Shown here piece by piece: positions 8,940-55,306 of a stretch of 64,000 bases of DNA. The stretch is taken from contig MCFH01000002.1 of NCBI GenBank assembly GCA_002104945.1, positions 1,674,001 through 1,738,000 on the forward strand, given 5' to 3'. The translations under genes were made by a program, and so were the position numbers. Origin of the DNA: Piromyces finnis finn (Eukaryota > Fungi > Neocallimastigomycota). The notes under the pieces are model-generated. The model did not search any database. It saw only the letters and a list, made by a program, of their open reading frames with translations, and was not told the DNA's origin. How positions within the stretch are numbered: position 1 is the first letter of the stretch; every line of letters begins with the position of its first letter.

Positions 8940-11900
8940 ATGACAATTAATTATATAATTTACCCGGAAAGTATTAATGATTACTCGAATAGTAAAAAAT
9001 CACTAACTAATAAAAAAGATATAAAATATGTTAATACTGATACTATAGATGATAATAATATTATCAAAAATAATATGAATTATCCAATATCACTTGAAAA
9101 AAATGATTTCATTTATAATGAATACAATTTAATTAATCCTTTAAAAAATATTTATAATATACAGAAACATGTAAAAGACAATCATTCTTCATTTAATAAT
9201 TCTAATTCAGCAATATTAATTAAAAAAACAAGACAAATGAATTTTTGTATTAATGGAGTATCTTACCAGGAAAAAGAAAATATCAATGAAAATCAAAGTA
9301 AATATAAATTATAATAATGTTTATTATTATAAAATTTATTATTTAATAATAATAATAATAATAATAAATATATATATATATATTAAAGGTAAAATACCTA
9401 GTGATAATAGTAATACTGATAAAAGTAATAAAGAAAATATAGATGTAAATATTTTTTTAATGATTTTATATATAGTAATATAATATTAATATTTTAAAAG
9501 GATATAAGAATAATCTTTATATAATTATAATAAAAAATATGACGAAAAACAATACAAAAAAAAAGTTTTATAAAGTTTATAGTTTAAGACAACGTTACTC
9601 TCCTAGAAAGTATAGAATTGAACGAGAAGCCATAAAACAATTTGAAACTATTGTGAATTATGGAAATGGAAATAATAATGAAAATAATGGTTTACTAAGA
9701 AAAAATCAGCCATTTAAATTAAAACTAAAAAAAGATTATGAAATTCATGATGATCTTAATAATAATGATAAAAACACATTATATAAAAACTCTGTTACTG
9801 CGAAATTTATCGGAAATAGGGAGGAGGAAAATATAAATAATAATACAACTAGTGATGATCAAACTAATTCTAAATCGACTTTATTTCATAAAAAATTACA
9901 ATTTAATGACAACAATATACTATTTAAAAGTCAATACACTAATTTATCAGAATTTAAGTCTTATCTTATAAATTATGGTAAGAAATATGGAATACAAAAA
10001 TTAAAAAAAGTCTTATATGAACAATTTTTTAACAAAATATACGATAAAAAACCAAAACTTAATGCCTTTATACAGAATAGTGAAGATAATTATGGTAATA
10101 ATATAAATTCATCTGAAAATACATTAAATATTTCAAATATATATACAGATTTATTGAATGAATTAGAACAGGAGATAGAAAAAAATAGCAATGATTCAAA
10201 TCATTCCTTTTTATTAAATAAAAAAGGTGAGAATATTAATCAATGTGTTCCATTAACTGAAACAAATATATTATATAATGAATTAGTAGTAAAAAAAAAT
10301 AATAATAGCGCTCCTCCACCATCTACACTTCTACTGCAATGTTCTGATACTTCAAGAACTAAAAAAAATGAAATAGATAAGTCAATATATCATCCAAAAT
10401 TTGATAGGAAGACTAAAGAAGAATTATTAAAAAAAAAATTCAAAAATATCAGTCTTAACGATTCAGTTGGCCTAATACATGATAAAAATAGTTGTAATTC
10501 AATAAATAGTATAGATATCAACGAATATGATAGTTATGATAAAGATATAAATTTAGATAGTGAGCAAGAACATTTAAATAAAAAATTTAATGAAAAACAG
10601 CATGTTGATCCATATGAAATAATGAATTATAAAGTTAAAATGTACAACAATAAACGTAAGCATAATATTGAAAGGAGTAAAATTAATGAAAAAGTTAAAG
10701 AAAATGAAGAAGAATTTCCTGTTTTTAAAGATTTCCTTTATCCTAGATGGTATCAACATCAAAAATATTATACTAATGAAAATGAATGTAATTTAAAAGG
10801 TCTTGGTGGTTTATATGGTGTAAACCTTTCTGAAGATGAAAATGATAGGTAAAAATAATAATTCATTATACTATTGTAAAATGATAATCTTATTAGTTAT
10901 GAAATACATTATATAATTAAAAAATATATTTTTTTTATTGTTATTGTTATTAATAATTAAAAAATAATGTAGTGACCAAATTAAAGATATATATATCGAT
11001 AATAAAACATTAAAAAAAATAATTGAAAGAAAAAATATTAAACAAAGGTATGCCTCTATAAATGATGATGATGATGATAGTCAGGATTCTAAGGATTCAT
11101 TTGATATTGATCCAAAAGATCAAATATTAAATGAAATTGAAATAGTTAAAAAAGATTTAATCAACTTAAGAAAAAAAAATAAAGCCTTATGGAATTGTGG
11201 TCATCCTCGGCAAAATAATTTTCATTATCCTTCTCAAGATGAATCTATTAAATATTGGAGTTGGAAAAAAAGACATCCAGAAAATGCTGGTAAGTACTAT
11301 GATAAAATTTATATATATATATAAACCTCTTTTTATAAATAAATTAAATATGAAAATGATCATAATAATATTATAATAAACAATATTTATTTGTATATTT
11401 AAATTTATAATAAATATTAATTATGGTAATTTATACAGCAATATTATTACAAAAAAGACAAAAATTTAAAATTCAATATGAACAGAAAATTAGAAAAATG
11501 ATAAGACTGTTTGAATTAATAAAAGTTTTAAAACAACCTGACTATATTAATATTAATAAAGTATATATAAGTATAAGAAAAGAATTCTTTAAATTATTTA
11601 AAAAATTATATAAATGAATTATTTTTAATTTATTTTATATAAATTATACTACAATACTATAATATAATTTTATATAAAAGATTCGAAATGAAGAAAGATA
11701 TTATGGAAAGAGAAAAATAAAACCAAAATCACCACCTCCATTTTCAGTCAATGGAAAAAAATATCTTCAGTATGAACCAACTCAATTCTTGTCATCTCAT
11801 ATACCTAAAGATGAAACTAAAATAAAAAATCCAGAGAAATCGACAAATGATATTAATTTGAATTCAAGAAAAAGCATTCCGAAAATTAAAAGCCAATATA

Positions 11901-50100: not shown

Positions 50101-50906
50101 TAATTTAATTTAATTTTTTTATTTATTAATTAATTATCTATCTATTTATTTATTTATTTATATTTATAAAAAAATTTATAATTACTAAATTCATTATTAA
50201 TATTAGAAAAAAAAATGTTTAAAAATTAATAATACTTGTAATAATAACAATAATAAAATCCCTTTATGTATACTTTTAACAAACTATAAACAAACAGCAA
50301 CAACAACAAGAACAATAACAAAAAAAGTTGATATTCATATTGAAGAATTTTAACTTTTTTTTTTTTATTATTGTTATTTAAAAAAAATAATTTATGAAAG
50401 TTACAATTTTATACTAGCTTTTCAATTAATAGTTTTATTTAAAATAAAGCTTTTCAATTTCAATTTGTATATTCCCTTTTTTTTTTTTTTTTTATAGATA
50501 AATATAAAACATTGAAAACAATAATAAAAGCATTTTAATATTATTGAACATATAGAATAATTGTATTATAAACATTTAAAATTGATATTTATTAAAAATT
50601 ATTATATATTTAATTACATATATTATTAACACATCGTTATATATCAATACCATTTTATAGGTATGTAATTATATATATATATATATTTATTTGTTTAATA
50701 ATAAAATTAAATATTAATTATAAATTTATATCTTTTATATTTATTTACAATTATTTTTTCACTATATATTAAACTATATTTAAAATTAATATCAAAAAAA
50801 GTATATTCATTATATATCCAATTTATTGTTATAAACACAATCAATTTATTATTGCTATTATTATTATTATTATTTTTTTTTTTTCAATTTAATAATATAT
50901 ATAAAT

Positions 50907-52313
50907 ATGAGTGGAGGAATGAACATTAATAATCCAGAACAATTTTCTGTAGGTGTTTACGTTTGTAAGAGCGAGAATGAATTTGGTACGGATATACCTG
51001 GTCAAATTCAAATAGTTGAAAATTTTTGTGGAGTAAAAAGCTTACATATTGTTGACTATTATATTGATAGTAATAATGATGATAAAATAGAATTGTTAGA
51101 AAGAGCAGCAATAAAAAGATTAATAAATGATATCAGCGAAGATAAAATAAACATGATAATTGTTAAAGATCTCGATGCCCTCAGTACTGATTATAAAAAA
51201 GTAAAGAAAATAATTCCAATATTATTATCAAAACCAAATAGTAGATTTATTTCTATTGAAAATGAAATCATGATAGGTTCAAATTCTTTAAAGGAAATTA
51301 ACGATAAGATAAAAGCAAAAGTAAGAAGACGCAAGTATAGAATGGGTGGTCGTTTGAAACCAAATGTTATTTTAAAGAAAGTTTATAGTGCACCACATAC
51401 TGATAATGTTATATGTAGACCACCATTTGGATATTTACTGAAACCAGATAGTAAAAACGAATTTATTATTGATAGACCAGCTGCTGATATTGTAGTTGAA
51501 ATTTTTGCAAAGATTATTGAAGGTTATTCCTATCAAAAAATAGCAAATAGTTTTAATGAAAGAGGCATTCTGACAGTTTCACAATATGCTGAAAAAATGG
51601 GAAGAAATCCAAGAAAAATTAGTACTCAATGGAATACTTCTACAATATATCAAATTGCTACTAATGAAATATATTTAGGACATTTAGTTAAATCAAACTT
51701 TGGAAGACCAACTTACAAATCAAAAAATCAGAAAAAAACAGAAAAAGTAATTTACTATAATGCTCATGAACCTATTATTGATGAACAAACATTTAAAATG
51801 GCACAAAATATTACTCACGGAAGAACCAAAAGTACCACCCAAAAAGTTTTAAATACTAGAAGAGCTCCATTTGGATATGATACAGATGTCAGTAATAATA
51901 ATAAATTTGTTATTGATCCAGAAGCAGCTGCTGTAGTCAGAACTATATTTAATCGTATTATTCAAGGATTTTTCTATTATCAAATTGCTGATGAATTTAA
52001 TTCCAACGGTGTATTAACAATATCTCAATATGAAGATAAAAAAGGAAAGAAACAAAGAAAAATAAGTACAAAATGGAATACATCAACAATTTATAAATTA
52101 GTTAGAAATGAAGTCTACTTAGGACACCTTGTTAAGATAAAAAAAATTATTGATGATGTTGACGGATCTATAAAAAAGGAAAAAATAGTTATTCGTAATA
52201 CGCATGAACCTATCATATCAGAAGATGTTTTTAAACTTGTTCAAAAAATTATTCGCAATAAACATTCTACCAATGTATCAGAGGGTAGTGAAACGGAAAA
52301 ATCAGAAATGTAA
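50907..52313 (+). CDS. Large-serine-recombinase-derived protein (TnpX/TndX-like): degenerate catalytic domain plus two tandem recombinase DNA-binding domains
   Basis: The N-terminal resolvase-like domain reads GVYVCKS...GQIQIVENFC...IVDYYID...ERAAIKRLINDISEDKINMIIVKDLDALSTDY...SRFISIEN. Two repeats of the recombinase domain follow (PFGY...FIID..AA.VV.IF..II.G..Y.QIA..FN..G.LT.SQY...WNTSTIY....NE.YLGHLVK...N.HEPII.E..F...Q), at residues ~172-302 and ~320-449. Single intact 468-codon ORF. Confidence 0.9.
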   Translation: MSGGMNINNPEQFSVGVYVCKSENEFGTDIPGQIQIVENFCGVKSLHIVDYYIDSNNDDKIELLERAAIKRLINDISEDKINMIIVKDLDALSTDYKKVKKIIPILLSKPNSRFISIENEIMIGSNSLKEINDKIKAKVRRRKYRMGGRLKPNVILKKVYSAPHTDNVICRPPFGYLLKPDSKNEFIIDRPAADIVVEIFAKIIEGYSYQKIANSFNERGILTVSQYAEKMGRNPRKISTQWNTSTIYQIATNEIYLGHLVKSNFGRPTYKSKNQKKTEKVIYYNAHEPIIDEQTFKMAQNITHGRTKSTTQKVLNTRRAPFGYDTDVSNNNKFVIDPEAAAVVRTIFNRIIQGFFYYQIADEFNSNGVLTISQYEDKKGKKQRKISTKWNTSTIYKLVRNEVYLGHLVKIKKIIDDVDGSIKKEKIVIRNTHEPIISEDVFKLVQKIIRNKHSTNVSEGSETEKSEM

Positions 52314-52888
52314 TTTAATTTTTTTTTTTTTTTTTTAATTTATTATTATTATTATTTTTTTTTAAATTCAAATTTAAAGAAAGAGAAAATGAATGATATT
52401 AATCCTTTAAAATTACCTAATTTACCTATTATGAATCATATTTATTTCTATATTTTTAAAAATACTTTTTTTTTTTTTTTTTTTTCATATATTATATATA
52501 AAATTTTTATATATCAAGTCATTAAAAAGAAACTATAAAATAAAAAATTAAAAAAAAAAAAAAAAAAAAAAAAAGCATCATCATCAACATAATAATAATA
52601 ATAATACCATTTTTATCTTTTTTTTTTTTTTTTTTTTTTTTTTATTTTAATATTTTTATTATTATAATTAGTAAAACTATTTATTTTTCTTAAAAAACAT
52701 AAAGATTTTAAAAAGATAAATATAGCGTTTAACTTGTAATAATAAATAGTAACAATATATATATCATATTTCAATTTTGTAATATTAATAGTATTATCTA
52801 TTATTATTAAAACATACTATTATTGAAAAGTAGTTTAAAATACATAATAAATAAATAAAAATACTAATTAAAATCTTTTATATAGTAT

Positions 52889-52923
<35 letters not shown>

Positions 52924-53080
52924 ACCTTTTTCTATCATATTACTTGTTATTATTGACCATAATTAATAATCATAAAGTGTTTTTTTTTGTGTAATAATAA
53001 ATATAACAATAAACACAATAAGCATAATAACAAACATAAAACATAATAAACATAATAAACATAAACATAATAAATATAAA

Positions 53081-53085
<5 letters not shown>

Positions 53086-53150
<65 letters not shown>
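53086..53150. repeat. (AAT)n microsatellite
   Basis: About 20 perfect AAT units. Confidence 0.9.
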
Positions 53151-53154
<4 letters not shown>

Positions 53155-53920
53155 TTAATATTAATATTAAATATATTGCATAATTCCAAGTATTAAAATT
53201 ATGTGACGTATTAATGAAGTTTTAAAAAAAATTAACACATTAATATTCTATTGTATATAATGCAATTTCAATAATATTATTAATATTTTAAAATAAACCC
53301 AACTAAATAAATAGATTATTGATATCATGGATTATTATATTCTATTATCATTTTCACTAAAAGATTAAGGAACAAATTATAACAATTGAAATTTTTATTT
53401 TTTTTTTTTTTAAAATAAATACTATTTTAAAAGCAAATTGATTTTTTTTTTCAAGATTAAAGTTAAAGGATGATACTTAACTTACATAATGATATTAAAA
53501 GTAATAATAATTTCTTTTAAGAATATCCTTTTTTTTTTTTTTTTTTTTTTTTTTCTGGTAAATTTCAAAAATATATTTTAGTTTAAAAAAAAAAAACAAT
53601 ATATTTATCACTTATATATAAAATTTTTTATTTTTATTTTTTTTATAGGATAATTTAACATAAATTTATAGAAAGTATTTTGTAATTTAACAATTTTTCA
53701 ATTTTTTTAAATTATTTTTTTTTTTTTACCTGAATAAAAATTGTTATAAACTTTAATTAATTATTATAAATAAAAACTATAAAATTATAATGATTAAATA
53801 CTTTTCTATTATTGAACAAACATTTAAATAATTATTATCATCTATCTATCTATATATATATATAAATATACTTTTCCAAATAATCTTATTTTTAATTAAA
53901 AGTAATAAATATGAACATTA

Positions 53921-55306
53921 TTACTTCAATAAAGTGAATGTAATGGATAAACTTAAAATGATAAATATTATTAAATTTAGTGGTTTTGAAATTGGATATG
54001 AACCGTCGTCAATTTCATAATTTGGTAATACTTTTTCATTTGTAATAATATTTGTGTCATTACCTTTGATAATGTTATTGCTATTGCTGCTTATTTCATC
54101 CTTATTATTATTATTATTATCAACTTTATTCACGTTTTCATTGTCTTTACTGTTAACATCATCCTTATTATTATTATCAACTTTATTCACGCTTTCATTG
54201 TCTTTACCGTTAACATCATCCTTATTATTAACACTGATATCATTTTTTGAATTGGTATTATTATTAGTACTGGTATCAGTATTTGAATTGGTATTGTTAT
54301 TAGCACTAGTAGTTTCATTCTTAATAGTGCTACTATTACTAATATTAATAACATTTTTAATATTTTCATTTTTTTCTATTTTATCATTATCTTTGTCATT
54401 GTTATTTGTATCCTTATTTGGTTTTGAGGAGGAAGAAGTACTATTAGTTTCTTCTGTTTTTTCATTTTTATTATAAGATTGTCCAGAAACATACATATGA
54501 TCTTTTTCTCCAAGACATTCAGCAACTGTAACAAAACGATATCCTTTTTCTTTCATACCACTCTTTTCAATAATCCATGGTGCAATTTCATGAACTGTAT
54601 AGTCTTGTGAATCATGCATAAGAATAAGATAACTATCTTTTTCTTTGGCAAATTCTTCTTTTAAAAATTTTATTGAATCTTCTACTCTTTTTTCTGCAGA
54701 ACCAGAACTTTCAAGATCCCAATCATTCGTATCAGTGTCCCATTGAATAAGACGATAGTTCCATTTATCAAGATTATTTTGACAATTTTCATCGCATTCT
54801 CCTTTTGGTGCACGGAAGTAGTATGGACGGTCACCCGTAACTTTTTCAATAAAATCATCCATATCCGTAAGGGATTTTTTAAATTCATTTGTATTACTTG
54901 ATATATTATGACCCCATGTATGGGAAGCAATTTGTAAACCATTATCATGTGCTTTTTTCATTGCATTTTGGAATTCTTCTGTTTCATAAGCAAAAGGATA
55001 GTGAAATTCAGCAACATGAAAGAAAGTTACTTTTGCATCTGTTTGGTCTACAATATAATCAACCAATTCTTTAGTATATTTATATGGACCATCATCAAAC
55101 TAAAATTTTATATAAAATTATTATTATATTATTAGAGGGATTACTTATTTATTTATTTATTATTATATATATATATTTTAAATTATATGGTGTAAATAGC
55201 TTACTGTTAATGCTATTGTTTTTTTTTCTTTACAAGAATAAATAATTTCAGCTTTAACTATATTTGAAATAGTTGCAATTAATGGAATGAAATTTATGAA
55301 CTTCAT
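53921..55306 (-). CDS. Secreted, probably GPI-anchored CE4/NodB polysaccharide (chitin) deacetylase, 2 exons, 426 aa
   Basis: Exon 1 55306-55205 encodes the signal peptide and ends ...KTIALT; exon 2 55099-53921 begins FDDGPY. All five CE4 motifs are present: TFDDGP, SHTWGH, RAPKG, DTNDW and LMHD. An N/S/T/D-rich stalk and a hydrophobic C-terminal tail (LIIFIILSLSITFTLLK) follow. Confidence 0.92.

What the first reader, a model, noticed from the sequence alone, without database searches (positions are those of the whole stretch)
50907..52313. Bacterial TnpX/TndX-like large serine recombinase gene embedded in fungal chromosomal DNA (candidate HGT and domestication)
Seen: an intact, intronless 468-aa ORF with AT-rich codon usage. 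It is flanked by the same poly-T/(ATT)n leader and trailer sequences as neighbouring fungal genes and has an AAAT-ATG context. There is no obvious Shine-Dalgarno site, and no phage, ICE or other bacterial genes are nearby. Established: serine recombinases with the recombinase (PF07508-type) domain are prokaryotic or phage proteins. The IVKDL-x-x-L-x-x-DY...RFISI, LT.S.Y and WN.STI...NE.YLGH...HEPII motifs resemble Firmicutes TnpX/TndX-type resolvase/integrases. Inference: the gene was acquired from a gut bacterium and retained as a host gene, which would be an unusual eukaryotic LSR-derived protein.
Basis: partly seen in the sequence, partly recalled or inferred. Interest (0 to 1): 0.88.

Follow-up and report, generated by a model that had tools for sequence, protein, structure and literature searches.

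The report
Dead bacterial integrase kept by gut fungi
A rumen fungus carries a gene that descends from a bacterial "large serine recombinase" but has lost its DNA-cutting residues and doubled its DNA-binding domain; related fungi keep, conserve and splice it, so it now looks like a host DNA-binding protein, not a recombinase.

Summary
Window 50907-52313 (+) is an intact 468-codon ORF that hits Pfam Resolvase (29 bits) and Recombinase (two copies, 142 bits). It lies on a 1.96-Mb Piromyces finnis contig among fungal genes. It is not a contaminant or a relic. Orthologs of 464-473 aa (78-94% identity) occur in Neocallimastix, Pecoramyces and rumen metagenomes. dN/dS is 0.04-0.14, and 0.01-0.05 in the first Recombinase domain. 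In two other lineages, transcript-like contigs lack a GT-AG intron that sits in the genomic 5' UTR. The next-best relatives are bacterial LSRs, mostly from Clostridia, at only 25-31% identity. The fungal clade sits on a very long stem, so the donor is unresolved. The catalytic Arg8, Arg68 and Arg71 are absent in 12 of 12 fungal proteins but present in 66 of 66 bacterial ones, and the Ser nucleophile position is not conserved. The zinc-ribbon/coiled-coil domain is missing. The Recombinase domain is duplicated in tandem, before the genera split. The most likely reading is a domesticated, catalytically dead LSR derivative that acts as a DNA-binding protein. Neocallimastix also has an adjacent 1,486-aa paralog with seven Recombinase domains. 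No paper found describes this family.

The parts
50907..52313 (+). Complete CDS (468 aa plus stop) of the LSR-derived protein. Met5 (50919) is an alternative in-frame start, used in the gene model of the close ortholog P0123.
   Evidence: ORF list; Pfam; identical protein in the P. finnis assembly.
50946..51275 (+). Resolvase-like N-terminal alpha/beta domain (residues 14-123). The fold is retained but the domain is catalytically degenerate.
   Evidence: PF00239 at 29 bits; AF2 block pLDDT mostly 73-93 apart from a low-confidence loop at residues 24-27; Foldseek match to the TP901-1 integrase N-terminal domain 3bvp, TMt 0.76; phmmer hit to 3bvp, E 1e-4.
50958..50975 (+). Remnant of the active-site motif Y-x-R-x-S, here Y-V-C-K-S-E. 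It is two residues shorter than in bacteria. There is no Arg8 equivalent, and the Ser position varies among the fungal orthologs.
   Evidence: Alignments A1, A2 and A4 with column counts: 66/66 bacterial proteins have R and S; 12/12 fungal proteins have a gap at R and C/S/Y at the S column (or S/W/N if the alignment is shifted).
51165..51188 (+). Remnant of the K-D-L-S-R-x-G-R motif, here K-D-L-D-A-L-S-T. Arg68 is replaced by Ala and Arg71 by Thr.
   Evidence: Column counts: R68 and R71 are present in 66/66 bacterial proteins; the fungal proteins have A/S/C and T/M.
51282..51416 (+). Basic linker (residues 126-170, pI 10.6) in the place of the long alpha-E helix and the alpha-E-to-RD linker. 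It is strongly conserved among the fungal orthologs. It may be an NLS and/or a minor-groove-binding segment (inference).
   Evidence: AF2 gives pLDDT below 50 for residues 141-168 and only two short helices; conservation in A2; pI.
51417..51824 (+). Recombinase domain 1 (RD1, residues 171-306).
   Evidence: PF07508 stretch 193-303; domain table; AF2 block pLDDT mostly 79-96, with a low-confidence loop at residues 264-279; dN/dS 0.013-0.047.
51858..52280 (+). Recombinase domain 2 (RD2, residues 318-458), a tandem duplicate of RD1.
   Evidence: RD1 and RD2 share 48% identity, E 4e-45; second PF07508 stretch; dN/dS 0.015-0.12.
52281..52310 (+). Short acidic C-terminal tail. It sits where bacterial LSRs have the zinc-ribbon and coiled-coil domains, which are absent here.
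   Evidence: No PF13408 hit, whereas nearly all bacterial hits carry PF13408; pI 4.1.
50661..50801 (+). Hypothetical 5'-UTR intron (GTATGT...AAAAAAAG). It is proposed only by analogy with the spliced 5'-UTR introns seen in Neocallimastix and in the L001 lineage. No P. finnis transcript was available.
   Evidence: Sequence read; analogy. Transcript-like contigs of the closest Piromyces-type lineage (L103, L104) start 75 nt upstream of the ATG and show no splice, so this part is weak.
53921..55066 (-). Neighbouring polysaccharide deacetylase gene. It is context only and serves as a synteny anchor shared with the related Piromyces-type contigs L015 and L102.
   Evidence: Pfam PF01522; tblastx and blastn synteny; gene tables.

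Best explanation
An ancestor of the anaerobic gut fungi (Neocallimastigomycota) acquired a large-serine-recombinase gene from a bacterium or a bacterial mobile element, most likely of the Bacillota/Clostridia type. The gene was then domesticated. The catalytic N-terminal domain kept its fold but lost the residues needed for DNA cleavage. The zinc-ribbon/coiled-coil module, which controls synapsis and directionality, was lost. The DNA-binding Recombinase domain (RD) was duplicated in tandem. The product is a basic protein (pI 9.5) consisting of a dead N-terminal domain, a basic linker, RD1 and RD2. It most likely binds specific DNA through its two RDs, possibly as a dimer through the surviving N-terminal domain, and serves a host function such as transcriptional or chromatin regulation. 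It does not recombine DNA. What is shown: the homology, the chromosomal fungal location, the loss of catalytic residues, the domain architecture, conservation and purifying selection across genera, and spliced transcripts in relatives. What is inferred: DNA binding, dimerisation, nuclear targeting and a regulatory role.
For: Homology: Pfam PF07508 (two copies) and PF00239. The AF2 model matches the SPbeta, Bxb1 and PhiC31 integrases and the TP901-1 N-terminal domain.
Host location: a 1.96-Mb P. finnis contig with eukaryotic neighbours and host-like GC3 of 0.14.
Catalytic loss: R8, S10, R68 and R71 are invariant in 66/66 bacterial comparators but absent or variable in 12/12 fungal proteins. There is no PF13408 hit. 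AF2 shows no long alpha-E helix.
RD duplication: 48% identity, E 4e-45. RD1 and RD2 are each monophyletic (99/100) and are sisters (98), so the duplication predates the split of the genera.
Retention: orthologs in Neocallimastix sp. 'constans', Pecoramyces and many rumen metagenome contigs. dN/dS is 0.04-0.14 overall, lowest in the RDs and 0.09-0.22 in the N-terminal domain. The locus is stable, with the order gene, tRNA-Ser, (deacetylase), CotH shared by L001 and L015/L102.
Expression: L004 matches the Neocallimastix genome (L007) in two blocks of 100% and 99.9% identity across a 345-nt GT...AG gap in the 5' UTR. L019 shows the same pattern against L001.
No mobile-element hallmarks: only low-complexity repeats flank the gene, and the window holds no second copy.
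The RDs and the linker are basic, with pI 9.6-10.6.
Against: DNA binding, target sequences and any regulatory role are untested here. The donor lineage is unresolved, because the fungal stem is 1.87 substitutions per site and long-branch attraction was flagged. Synteny between Piromyces and Neocallimastix was not detectable within +/-10 kb, so cross-genus orthology rests on sequence and tree alone. No P. finnis transcript was examined. That the spliced contigs derive from RNA is inferred from the splice junctions, not from sample metadata. dS between genera is about 1, close to saturation, in a genome with extreme AT bias, so the dN/dS values are approximate. The N-terminal domain is still under purifying selection, so it has some function that I cannot specify.
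Confidence: 0.72

Rival explanations
1. It is still an active site-specific recombinase or transposase of a eukaryotic mobile element, using an unconventional active site.
For: The full-length ORF is conserved. The N-terminal domain fold is retained and under purifying selection (dN/dS 0.09-0.22). Tyr18, Gln33, Asp54, Arg66, Lys87 and Asp88 are conserved with the bacterial proteins. Neocallimastix has two copies plus a paralog.
Against: Arg8, Arg68 and Arg71 are absent in all 12 fungal proteins, and the Ser position is C/S/Y (or S/W/N). Established mutagenesis of Tn3 and gamma-delta resolvase shows that these residues are essential. The zinc-ribbon/coiled-coil domain is absent and there is no long alpha-E helix. 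There are no terminal or att-like repeats. The window holds a single copy. The locus is stable across lineages with dS of about 1.
Confidence: 0.04
2. It is bacterial contamination or a chimeric assembly join, not a fungal gene.
For: The domains are otherwise prokaryotic or phage domains, and the closest non-fungal relatives are gut Clostridia.
Against: The gene is embedded about 247 kb from the end of a 1.96-Mb contig, with 13-16% GC fungal intergenic DNA on both sides. Its codon usage is host-like, with GC3 of 0.14. Independent assemblies of other genera and many metagenome contigs carry orthologs in equally AT-rich contexts with fungal neighbours such as CotH, the deacetylase, HSP20 and a tRNA-Ser gene. 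Spliceosomal GT-AG introns occur in the 5' UTR. The best bacterial hit shares only about 30% identity.
Confidence: 0.01
3. It is a neutral relic of a transfer, an unexpressed pseudogene-to-be with no host function.
For: The catalytic residues are lost. No expression data for P. finnis itself were examined.
Against: ORFs of 464-473 aa are intact in every lineage sampled, despite dS of 0.6-1.2. dN/dS is 0.04-0.14, and 0.01-0.05 in RD1. Spliced transcript contigs exist in two lineages, and transcript-like contigs in the Piromyces-type lineage.
Confidence: 0.02
4. It is domesticated, but it is not a sequence-specific double-stranded-DNA binder. The RDs might instead bind RNA, single-stranded or structured DNA, or proteins, or the protein might antagonise incoming bacterial or phage LSR elements.
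For: Function was not assayed. The RDs are basic, which would also suit RNA binding. The protein lacks the zinc-ribbon domain that supplies much of the att-site specificity in LSRs (established from the LI integrase-DNA structure 4KIS).
Against: In every characterised LSR, the RD is a double-stranded-DNA-binding module that contacts the att half-site (4KIS and the Bxb1, PhiC31 and SPbeta cryo-EM entries found). The strongest constraint falls on the RDs. Tandem arrays of DNA-binding modules are the usual way to build specificity.
Confidence: 0.15

Closest known systems
Large serine recombinases / serine integrases of Bacillota mobile elements and phages (TndX of Tn5397, TnpX, CcrA/B, SPbeta SprA, A118/LI Int, TP901-1 Int, Bxb1, PhiC31)
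   Same: The N-terminal resolvase-fold domain is followed by a Recombinase domain (PF07508). The best sequence and structure matches are these proteins. Conserved motifs include VKDL, RFI(S/A), PFGY, W...Y.G and HEPII.
   Different: Identity is only 25-31%. The catalytic Arg8, Arg68 and Arg71 are lost and the Ser is not conserved. There is no zinc-ribbon/coiled-coil domain, no long alpha-E helix and there are two tandem RDs. The gene is a single-copy eukaryotic chromosomal gene with host codon usage and, in relatives, a spliced 5'-UTR intron. There are no att sites and no element.
Bacterial multi-RD LSR variants found here (P0150: Resolvase + 4 RDs; P0151: Resolvase + 3 RDs; P0158 and P0178: 2 RDs; P0202: 5 RDs)
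   Same: They have a Resolvase domain followed by tandem RDs. P0150 and P0151 also lack the zinc ribbon. These are the top-scoring non-fungal hits (262 and 200 bits).
   Different: P0150 and P0151 keep the full catalytic motif set (YCRLS, KDLSRLGR). P0150 and P0158 were seen to sit in bacterial tandem-LSR operons, directly after a standard LSR gene. Their RD repeats form their own clade (100), separate from the fungal RD1+RD2 clade (98), so the duplications are independent.
IS607-family serine recombinase genes transferred into the yeast Lachancea (Saccharomyces) kluyveri (Rolland et al. 2009, PMC2715888)
   Same: A serine recombinase of bacterial origin was fixed in a fungal genome, duplicated and kept under purifying selection (dN/dS about 0.19). 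Some copies lack the catalytic Ser or an Arg.
   Different: That case involves the small IS607/TnpA type (an N-terminal MerR-like DNA-binding domain plus a catalytic domain), not an LSR with PF07508 domains. It is species-specific rather than conserved across genera. Most of those copies keep their catalytic motifs.
Other HGT-derived genes of Neocallimastigomycota (Murphy et al. 2019, bioRxiv 10.1101/487215; Duarte and Huynen 2019, bioRxiv 10.1101/514042)
   Same: The origin is gut-bacterial, largely Clostridia-like. The composition is ameliorated and the gene is conserved across anaerobic-fungus genera.
   Different: The main texts of those surveys, which deal chiefly with HGT of metabolic and carbohydrate-active-enzyme genes, contain neither 'recombinase', 'resolvase' nor 'integrase'. 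The present gene comes from a mobile-element enzyme and has been turned into a non-enzymatic protein.

Membership tests
Large serine recombinase (functional enzyme family) | N-terminal resolvase-fold catalytic domain (PF00239) | tested here: met
   29 bits against a gathering score of 23.3, covering profile positions 4-102 of 145. The AF2 domain is confident and Foldseek matches 3bvp with TMt 0.76.
Large serine recombinase (functional enzyme family) | Catalytic Ser nucleophile with Arg8, Arg68 and Arg71 (gamma-delta numbering) | tested here: not met
   These residues are invariant in 66/66 bacterial comparators. In 12/12 fungal proteins Arg8 falls in a 2-residue deletion, the Ser column holds C/S/Y (S/W/N in the shifted alignment), Arg68 is A/S/C and Arg71 is T/M.
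Large serine recombinase (functional enzyme family) | Long alpha-E helix that forms the dimer and tetramer interface | tested here: inconclusive
   The segment has a similar length but is highly diverged. AF2 gives two short helices and pLDDT below 50 for residues 141-168. A monomer prediction cannot settle the question.
Large serine recombinase (functional enzyme family) | Recombinase domain (PF07508) | tested here: met
   Two copies, 141.9 bits in total, both predicted confidently.
Large serine recombinase (functional enzyme family) | Zinc-ribbon domain with embedded coiled coil (PF13408) | tested here: not met
   There is no hit at E <= 1. Only about 10 residues follow RD2. Nearly all bacterial hits carry PF13408.
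Large serine recombinase (functional enzyme family) | Residence on a mobile element with att sites or cargo genes | tested here: not met
   Only low-complexity repeats flank the gene. The neighbours are fungal genes. The locus is shared between lineages.
Domesticated recombinase/transposase-derived host gene | Orthologs across species under purifying selection, in an immobile location | tested here: met
   Orthologs occur in Piromyces, Neocallimastix and Pecoramyces. dN/dS is 0.04-0.14. The gene order gene, tRNA-Ser, CotH or deacetylase is shared. Synteny between Piromyces and Neocallimastix was not detected within 10 kb.
Domesticated recombinase/transposase-derived host gene | Expressed as a host mRNA | tested here: met
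   This holds for relatives. A GT-AG 5'-UTR intron is removed in L004 relative to L007 and in L019 relative to L001. It was not tested for the P. finnis copy itself.
Bacterium-to-fungus HGT gene of Neocallimastigomycota | Nearest non-self homologs are bacterial; the fungal sequences form one clade; no homologs in other eukaryotes | tested here: met
The fungal clade has support 100. No other eukaryotic hit appeared among the listed hits, but most database entries are unnamed, so absence from other eukaryotes is only provisionally shown.
TnpX/TndX subfamily specifically | Closer to TnpX/TndX than to other LSR subfamilies | tested here: inconclusive
   TndX is among the best annotated plasmid hits at 29.5% identity, E 6e-16. 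Many unnamed Clostridia LSRs score the same or better, and the tree does not resolve a sister group.

The most novel reading that the evidence does not exclude
The LSR Recombinase domain has been co-opted in anaerobic gut fungi as a new modular eukaryotic DNA-binding domain. It would be deployed in tandem arrays: two in the conserved 468-aa protein and seven in the Neocallimastix paralog. These would form a lineage-specific class of transcription or chromatin factors born from a bacterial mobile-element enzyme. As far as I know, this would be the first LSR-derived host gene family in any eukaryote.
Probability: 0.45. Interest if true: 0.78.

Novelty: new variant of a known kind. Interest (0 to 1): 0.64.

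Why it matters
Domesticated recombinases and transposases such as RAG1, the CENP-B/pogo-derived proteins and Crypton-derived genes are a classic source of new eukaryotic DNA-binding proteins. All well-known cases derive from DDE or tyrosine enzymes. To my knowledge serine recombinases, and large serine integrases in particular, have no described domesticated descendants in eukaryotes. Here a bacterial LSR has been stripped of its catalysis and synapsis modules. Its DNA-recognition module has been multiplied and kept under strong constraint across a fungal phylum that is known for heavy bacterial gene uptake. This shows that HGT into these fungi is not limited to metabolic enzymes. It also offers a natural experiment on RD-DNA recognition without the zinc-ribbon domain, which is relevant to engineering LSR specificity. 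Finally, it gives a candidate lineage-specific regulator for organisms that have few genetic tools.

Tried and rejected
- Contamination or chimera: rejected on contig size, flanking composition, fungal neighbours, independent assemblies and introns.
- Mobile element: the repeat search over 47-56 kb gave only (ATT)n and poly-A/T low-complexity families. tblastn of the protein against the window found only the gene itself. The sigma-70 and terminator scans are uninformative in DNA this AT-rich (36 found against 29 expected).
- Poly(A) tails as evidence of expression: unusable, because genomic A-runs cannot be told apart from tails. Splice junctions were used instead.
- Donor identification: the first scan of bacterial genomes, with a mixed fungal/bacterial alignment, failed because it had no conserved stretch. 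The scan with P0151/P0150 returned Clostridia loci, but the full-length matches turned out to be two adjacent LSR genes, not multi-RD proteins. The tree of the N-terminal domain plus RD1 left the sister group unresolved.
- The metagenome scan with the protein returned only one extra locus, L019.
- An apparent 18-residue deletion of alpha-E in alignment A1 was an alignment artefact. A2 shows similar lengths.
- Searches for more poly-RD fungal paralogs found only the Neocallimastix lanati model P0298.
- Literature searches for any description of this gene family found nothing.
- A 5'-UTR intron in the Piromyces-type lineage was not supported. L103 and L104 are colinear with genomic L102.
Full report
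**Observation.** Window 50907-52313 (+) holds an uninterrupted 468-codon ORF. Pfam gives Recombinase PF07508 at E 9e-42 in two separate stretches, and Resolvase PF00239 at 29 bits, just above its gathering score and covering only profile positions 4-102 of 145. NCBIfam finds only far-sub-threshold similarity to the CcrB, XisF, CcrA and CcrC recombinases.

**Provenance and context.** The identical protein is encoded once, on MCFH01000002.1 of GCA_002104945.1, a 1.96-Mb contig. That assembly is Piromyces finnis. The window has 11-34% GC per kb. The CDS has 27% GC with GC3 of 0.14, inside the range of neighbouring genes (0.13-0.27). Two Clostridia relatives have GC3 of 0.38-0.43. The neighbours are homocitrate synthase, a polysaccharide deacetylase, an intron-bearing Ras-like GTPase model and N/S-rich low-complexity ORFs typical of these fungi. 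Repeats around the gene are only low-complexity, and the window contains no second copy. Contamination and chimerism are effectively excluded.

**Anatomy.**
- Residues 14-123 form a resolvase-like alpha/beta domain.
- Residues 126-170 form a strongly basic, conserved linker (pI 10.6).
- Residues 171-306 (RD1) and 318-458 (RD2) are two Recombinase domains that share 48% identity (E 4e-45).
- Ten acidic residues end the protein.
- There is no zinc-ribbon/coiled-coil domain (PF13408), which nearly all bacterial hits have.

I aligned 12 fungal proteins with 66 bacterial LSRs. The bacterial proteins all have Y-x-R-x-S, G40 and K-D-L-S-R-x-G-R. The fungal proteins all lack two residues in the first motif, so there is no Arg8 equivalent. 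They have C/S/Y at the Ser column (S/W/N if the register is shifted), A/S/C for Arg68 and T/M for Arg71. From established resolvase and invertase enzymology, loss of these residues abolishes catalysis. Tyr18, Gln33, Asp54, Arg66, Lys87 and Asp88 are retained.

**Structure.** An AlphaFold2 model was built with a 78-sequence alignment (mean pLDDT 76.6). It gives confident N-terminal, RD1 and RD2 domains. Residues 141-168, where LSRs have the long alpha-E helix, have pLDDT below 50 and only two short helices. Foldseek against the PDB returns serine integrases as top matches: SPbeta-type 9y66 and 9dxd, Bxb1 9iu2, PhiC31 9rah and 4bqq, the TP901-1 N-terminal domain 3bvp (TMt 0.76) and the LI integrase-DNA complex 4kis. 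By sequence, only 3bvp is detectable.

**Retention in fungi.** A search of 5.8 billion proteins finds six clusters of 464-473-aa proteins at 78-100% identity, then a drop to about 30%. Members include two proteins of Neocallimastix sp. 'constans' (on contigs of 1.3 Mb and 414 kb), a Pecoramyces ruminantium fragment and many rumen or faecal metagenome contigs. Pairwise NG86 dN/dS values are:
- whole gene: 0.04-0.14
- RD1: 0.013-0.047
- RD2: 0.015-0.12
- N-terminal domain: 0.09-0.22

dS is 0.6-1.2. These values are approximate because of saturation and AT bias, but they are far below 1. The related contigs L015/L102 share the downstream deacetylase with the window. L001 and L015/L102 share a downstream tRNA-Ser(UGA) (81 of 82 nt identical) and a CotH gene (68% aa identity). 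The flanks of the Piromyces and Neocallimastix loci are not recognisably syntenic within 10 kb.

**Expression.**
- Contig L004 matches the Neocallimastix genome (L007) as 1-48 = 9559-9606 (100%) and 47-1614 = 9950-11517 (99.9%). The skipped 345 nt begin with GTATTT and end with AATAG, which marks a spliced 5'-UTR intron.
- L019 lacks a piece of about 100 nt, GTAAG...AATAG, that is present in genomic L001.
- In the Piromyces-type lineage, L103 and L104 come from the same sample series. They start 75 nt upstream of the ATG, end 65-80 nt after the stop and are colinear with the genome.

So the CDS is intronless, but the gene has acquired eukaryotic gene structure and is transcribed in relatives. 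The P. finnis copy itself was not tested.

**Origin.**
- An exhaustive HMMER scan of 1.84 billion representatives lists one fungal representative and then bacterial LSRs.
- The top two, P0150 and P0151, are Resolvase + 4 RDs and Resolvase + 3 RDs, without a zinc ribbon but with intact catalytic motifs.
- P0150 and P0158 lie in bacterial contigs immediately after a standard LSR gene.
- Relatives of that 'MARKSRK...' subfamily occur in Butyrivibrio, Lacrimispora, Oscillospiraceae and rumen Bacillota MAGs.
- Annotated best hits include TndX on Enterococcus plasmids (29.5% identity) and Ruminococcus MAG proteins.
- In a tree of RDs, fungal RD1 and RD2 are each monophyletic (99, 100) and are sisters (98). 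The P0150/P0151 repeats form their own clade (100). The tandem duplications are therefore independent, and the fungal one predates the split of the genera.
- In a tree of the N-terminal domain plus RD1, the fungal clade (100) sits on a stem of 1.87 substitutions per site, with long-branch attraction flagged.

A Bacillota or Clostridia mobile element is the likely source, but the donor is not resolved.

**Expansion.** About 1.8 kb downstream of one Neocallimastix copy lies a single open frame of 1,486 codons from its first ATG (L011:13230-17690). It has a similarly degenerate N-terminal domain that shares the fungal-specific 'ENFC' motif and lacks the Y-x-R-x-S motif. Four RDs follow, then an N/S-rich linker and three more RDs, so Pfam sees seven PF07508 stretches. 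Existing gene models cover only fragments of it. RDs 2-6 group with the RDs of the 468-aa family, though with weak deep support. No such paralog was found elsewhere.

**Mechanism (inference).** In characterised LSRs, the RD is the double-stranded-DNA-binding module for the inner att half-site. Catalysis resides in the N-terminal domain, and synapsis and directionality reside in the zinc-ribbon/coiled-coil domain. This rests on established structural work (4KIS and the cryo-EM entries). The fungal protein keeps and duplicates only the DNA-binding module, and that is where selection is strongest. It also has a conserved basic linker that could track the minor groove or serve as an NLS. The most economical model is a non-catalytic, sequence-specific DNA-binding protein with a host regulatory or chromatin role, possibly dimeric through the retained N-terminal fold.

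**Comparison and novelty.** The closest precedent in fungi is the IS607-type small serine recombinase family transferred into Lachancea kluyveri (PMC2715888). That case is a different subfamily, is species-specific and is mostly still catalytically intact. The main texts of two HGT surveys of anaerobic fungi do not mention a recombinase, resolvase or integrase. No paper combining PF07508 with eukaryotes describes such a gene. The protein already exists as an unremarked gene model in public databases. I rate it a new variant of a known kind, namely a domesticated, HGT-derived recombinase. It is not a functional member of the LSR enzyme family.

**Limits.** There is no functional assay and no P. 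finnis transcript. The donor is unresolved. That the spliced contigs derive from RNA is inferred from the splice junctions. Absence from other eukaryotes is only provisionally shown, because most database hits are unnamed.

Noticed in passing
L011:13230-17690 (+) (Neocallimastix sp. 'constans' JBODTK010000152.1), 1.8 kb downstream of the ortholog at L011:10001-11416: One uninterrupted ORF of 1,486 codons from its first ATG. It has a degenerate resolvase-like N-terminus, 4 Recombinase domains, an N/S-rich low-complexity linker and 3 more Recombinase domains (7 PF07508 stretches, 247.7 bits). Existing gene models cover only fragments of it: 310 aa here and 1,053 aa in N. lanati (P0298).
   Followed up: partly
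Proteins P0150 (766 aa), P0151 (620 aa), P0202 (847 aa) and P0279 (629 aa) from metagenomes: Bacterial serine recombinases with 3-5 tandem Recombinase domains. P0150 and P0151 were confirmed to lack a zinc ribbon and keep their catalytic motifs; P0150 was seen to follow a standard LSR gene in an overlapping operon. P0202 begins 'YTRVNT', so an Asn replaces the catalytic Ser. This architecture may be undescribed in bacteria too.
   Followed up: partly
L007:9607-9951 (Neocallimastix) and about L001:179-275: GT...AG introns inside the 5' UTR of the orthologs, absent from contigs L004 and L019. This shows that those JGI contigs derive from RNA and that the transferred gene gained spliceosomal introns outside its CDS.
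   Followed up: yes
L007:8520-11494 against L011:8460-11491: The two Neocallimastix copies share 78% nucleotide identity across the CDS and also about 1.5 kb of upstream sequence. In a genome whose intergenic DNA is otherwise fast-evolving low-complexity sequence, this is unusually long conservation. It may mark a conserved promoter or 5'-UTR region.
   Followed up: no
L015:3595-3676, L102:3740-3821, L001:3334-3415 (all - strand); window 52314-53920: A tRNA-Ser(UGA) gene lies about 1.6 kb downstream of the ortholog in two related lineages (81 of 82 nt identical). It is absent from the P. finnis window, which has no tRNA gene at all in 64 kb. The CotH gene that follows in those contigs is also absent from the window.
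   Followed up: partly
window 54108-54221: Two 57-nt tandem copies (96% identical) lie inside the polysaccharide deacetylase ORF. They encode part of its N/D/K-rich linker (repeats of the type ...NKDDVN(G/S)KDNE(S/N)VNKVDNNN...).
   Followed up: no
L020:5554-7725 (bacterial contig carrying P0158): SIR2/STALD and TIR-domain genes (defence-system-like) and a group II intron reverse transcriptase flank the tandem LSR pair. This suggests that the bacterial relatives ride on defence-island-type mobile elements.
   Followed up: no
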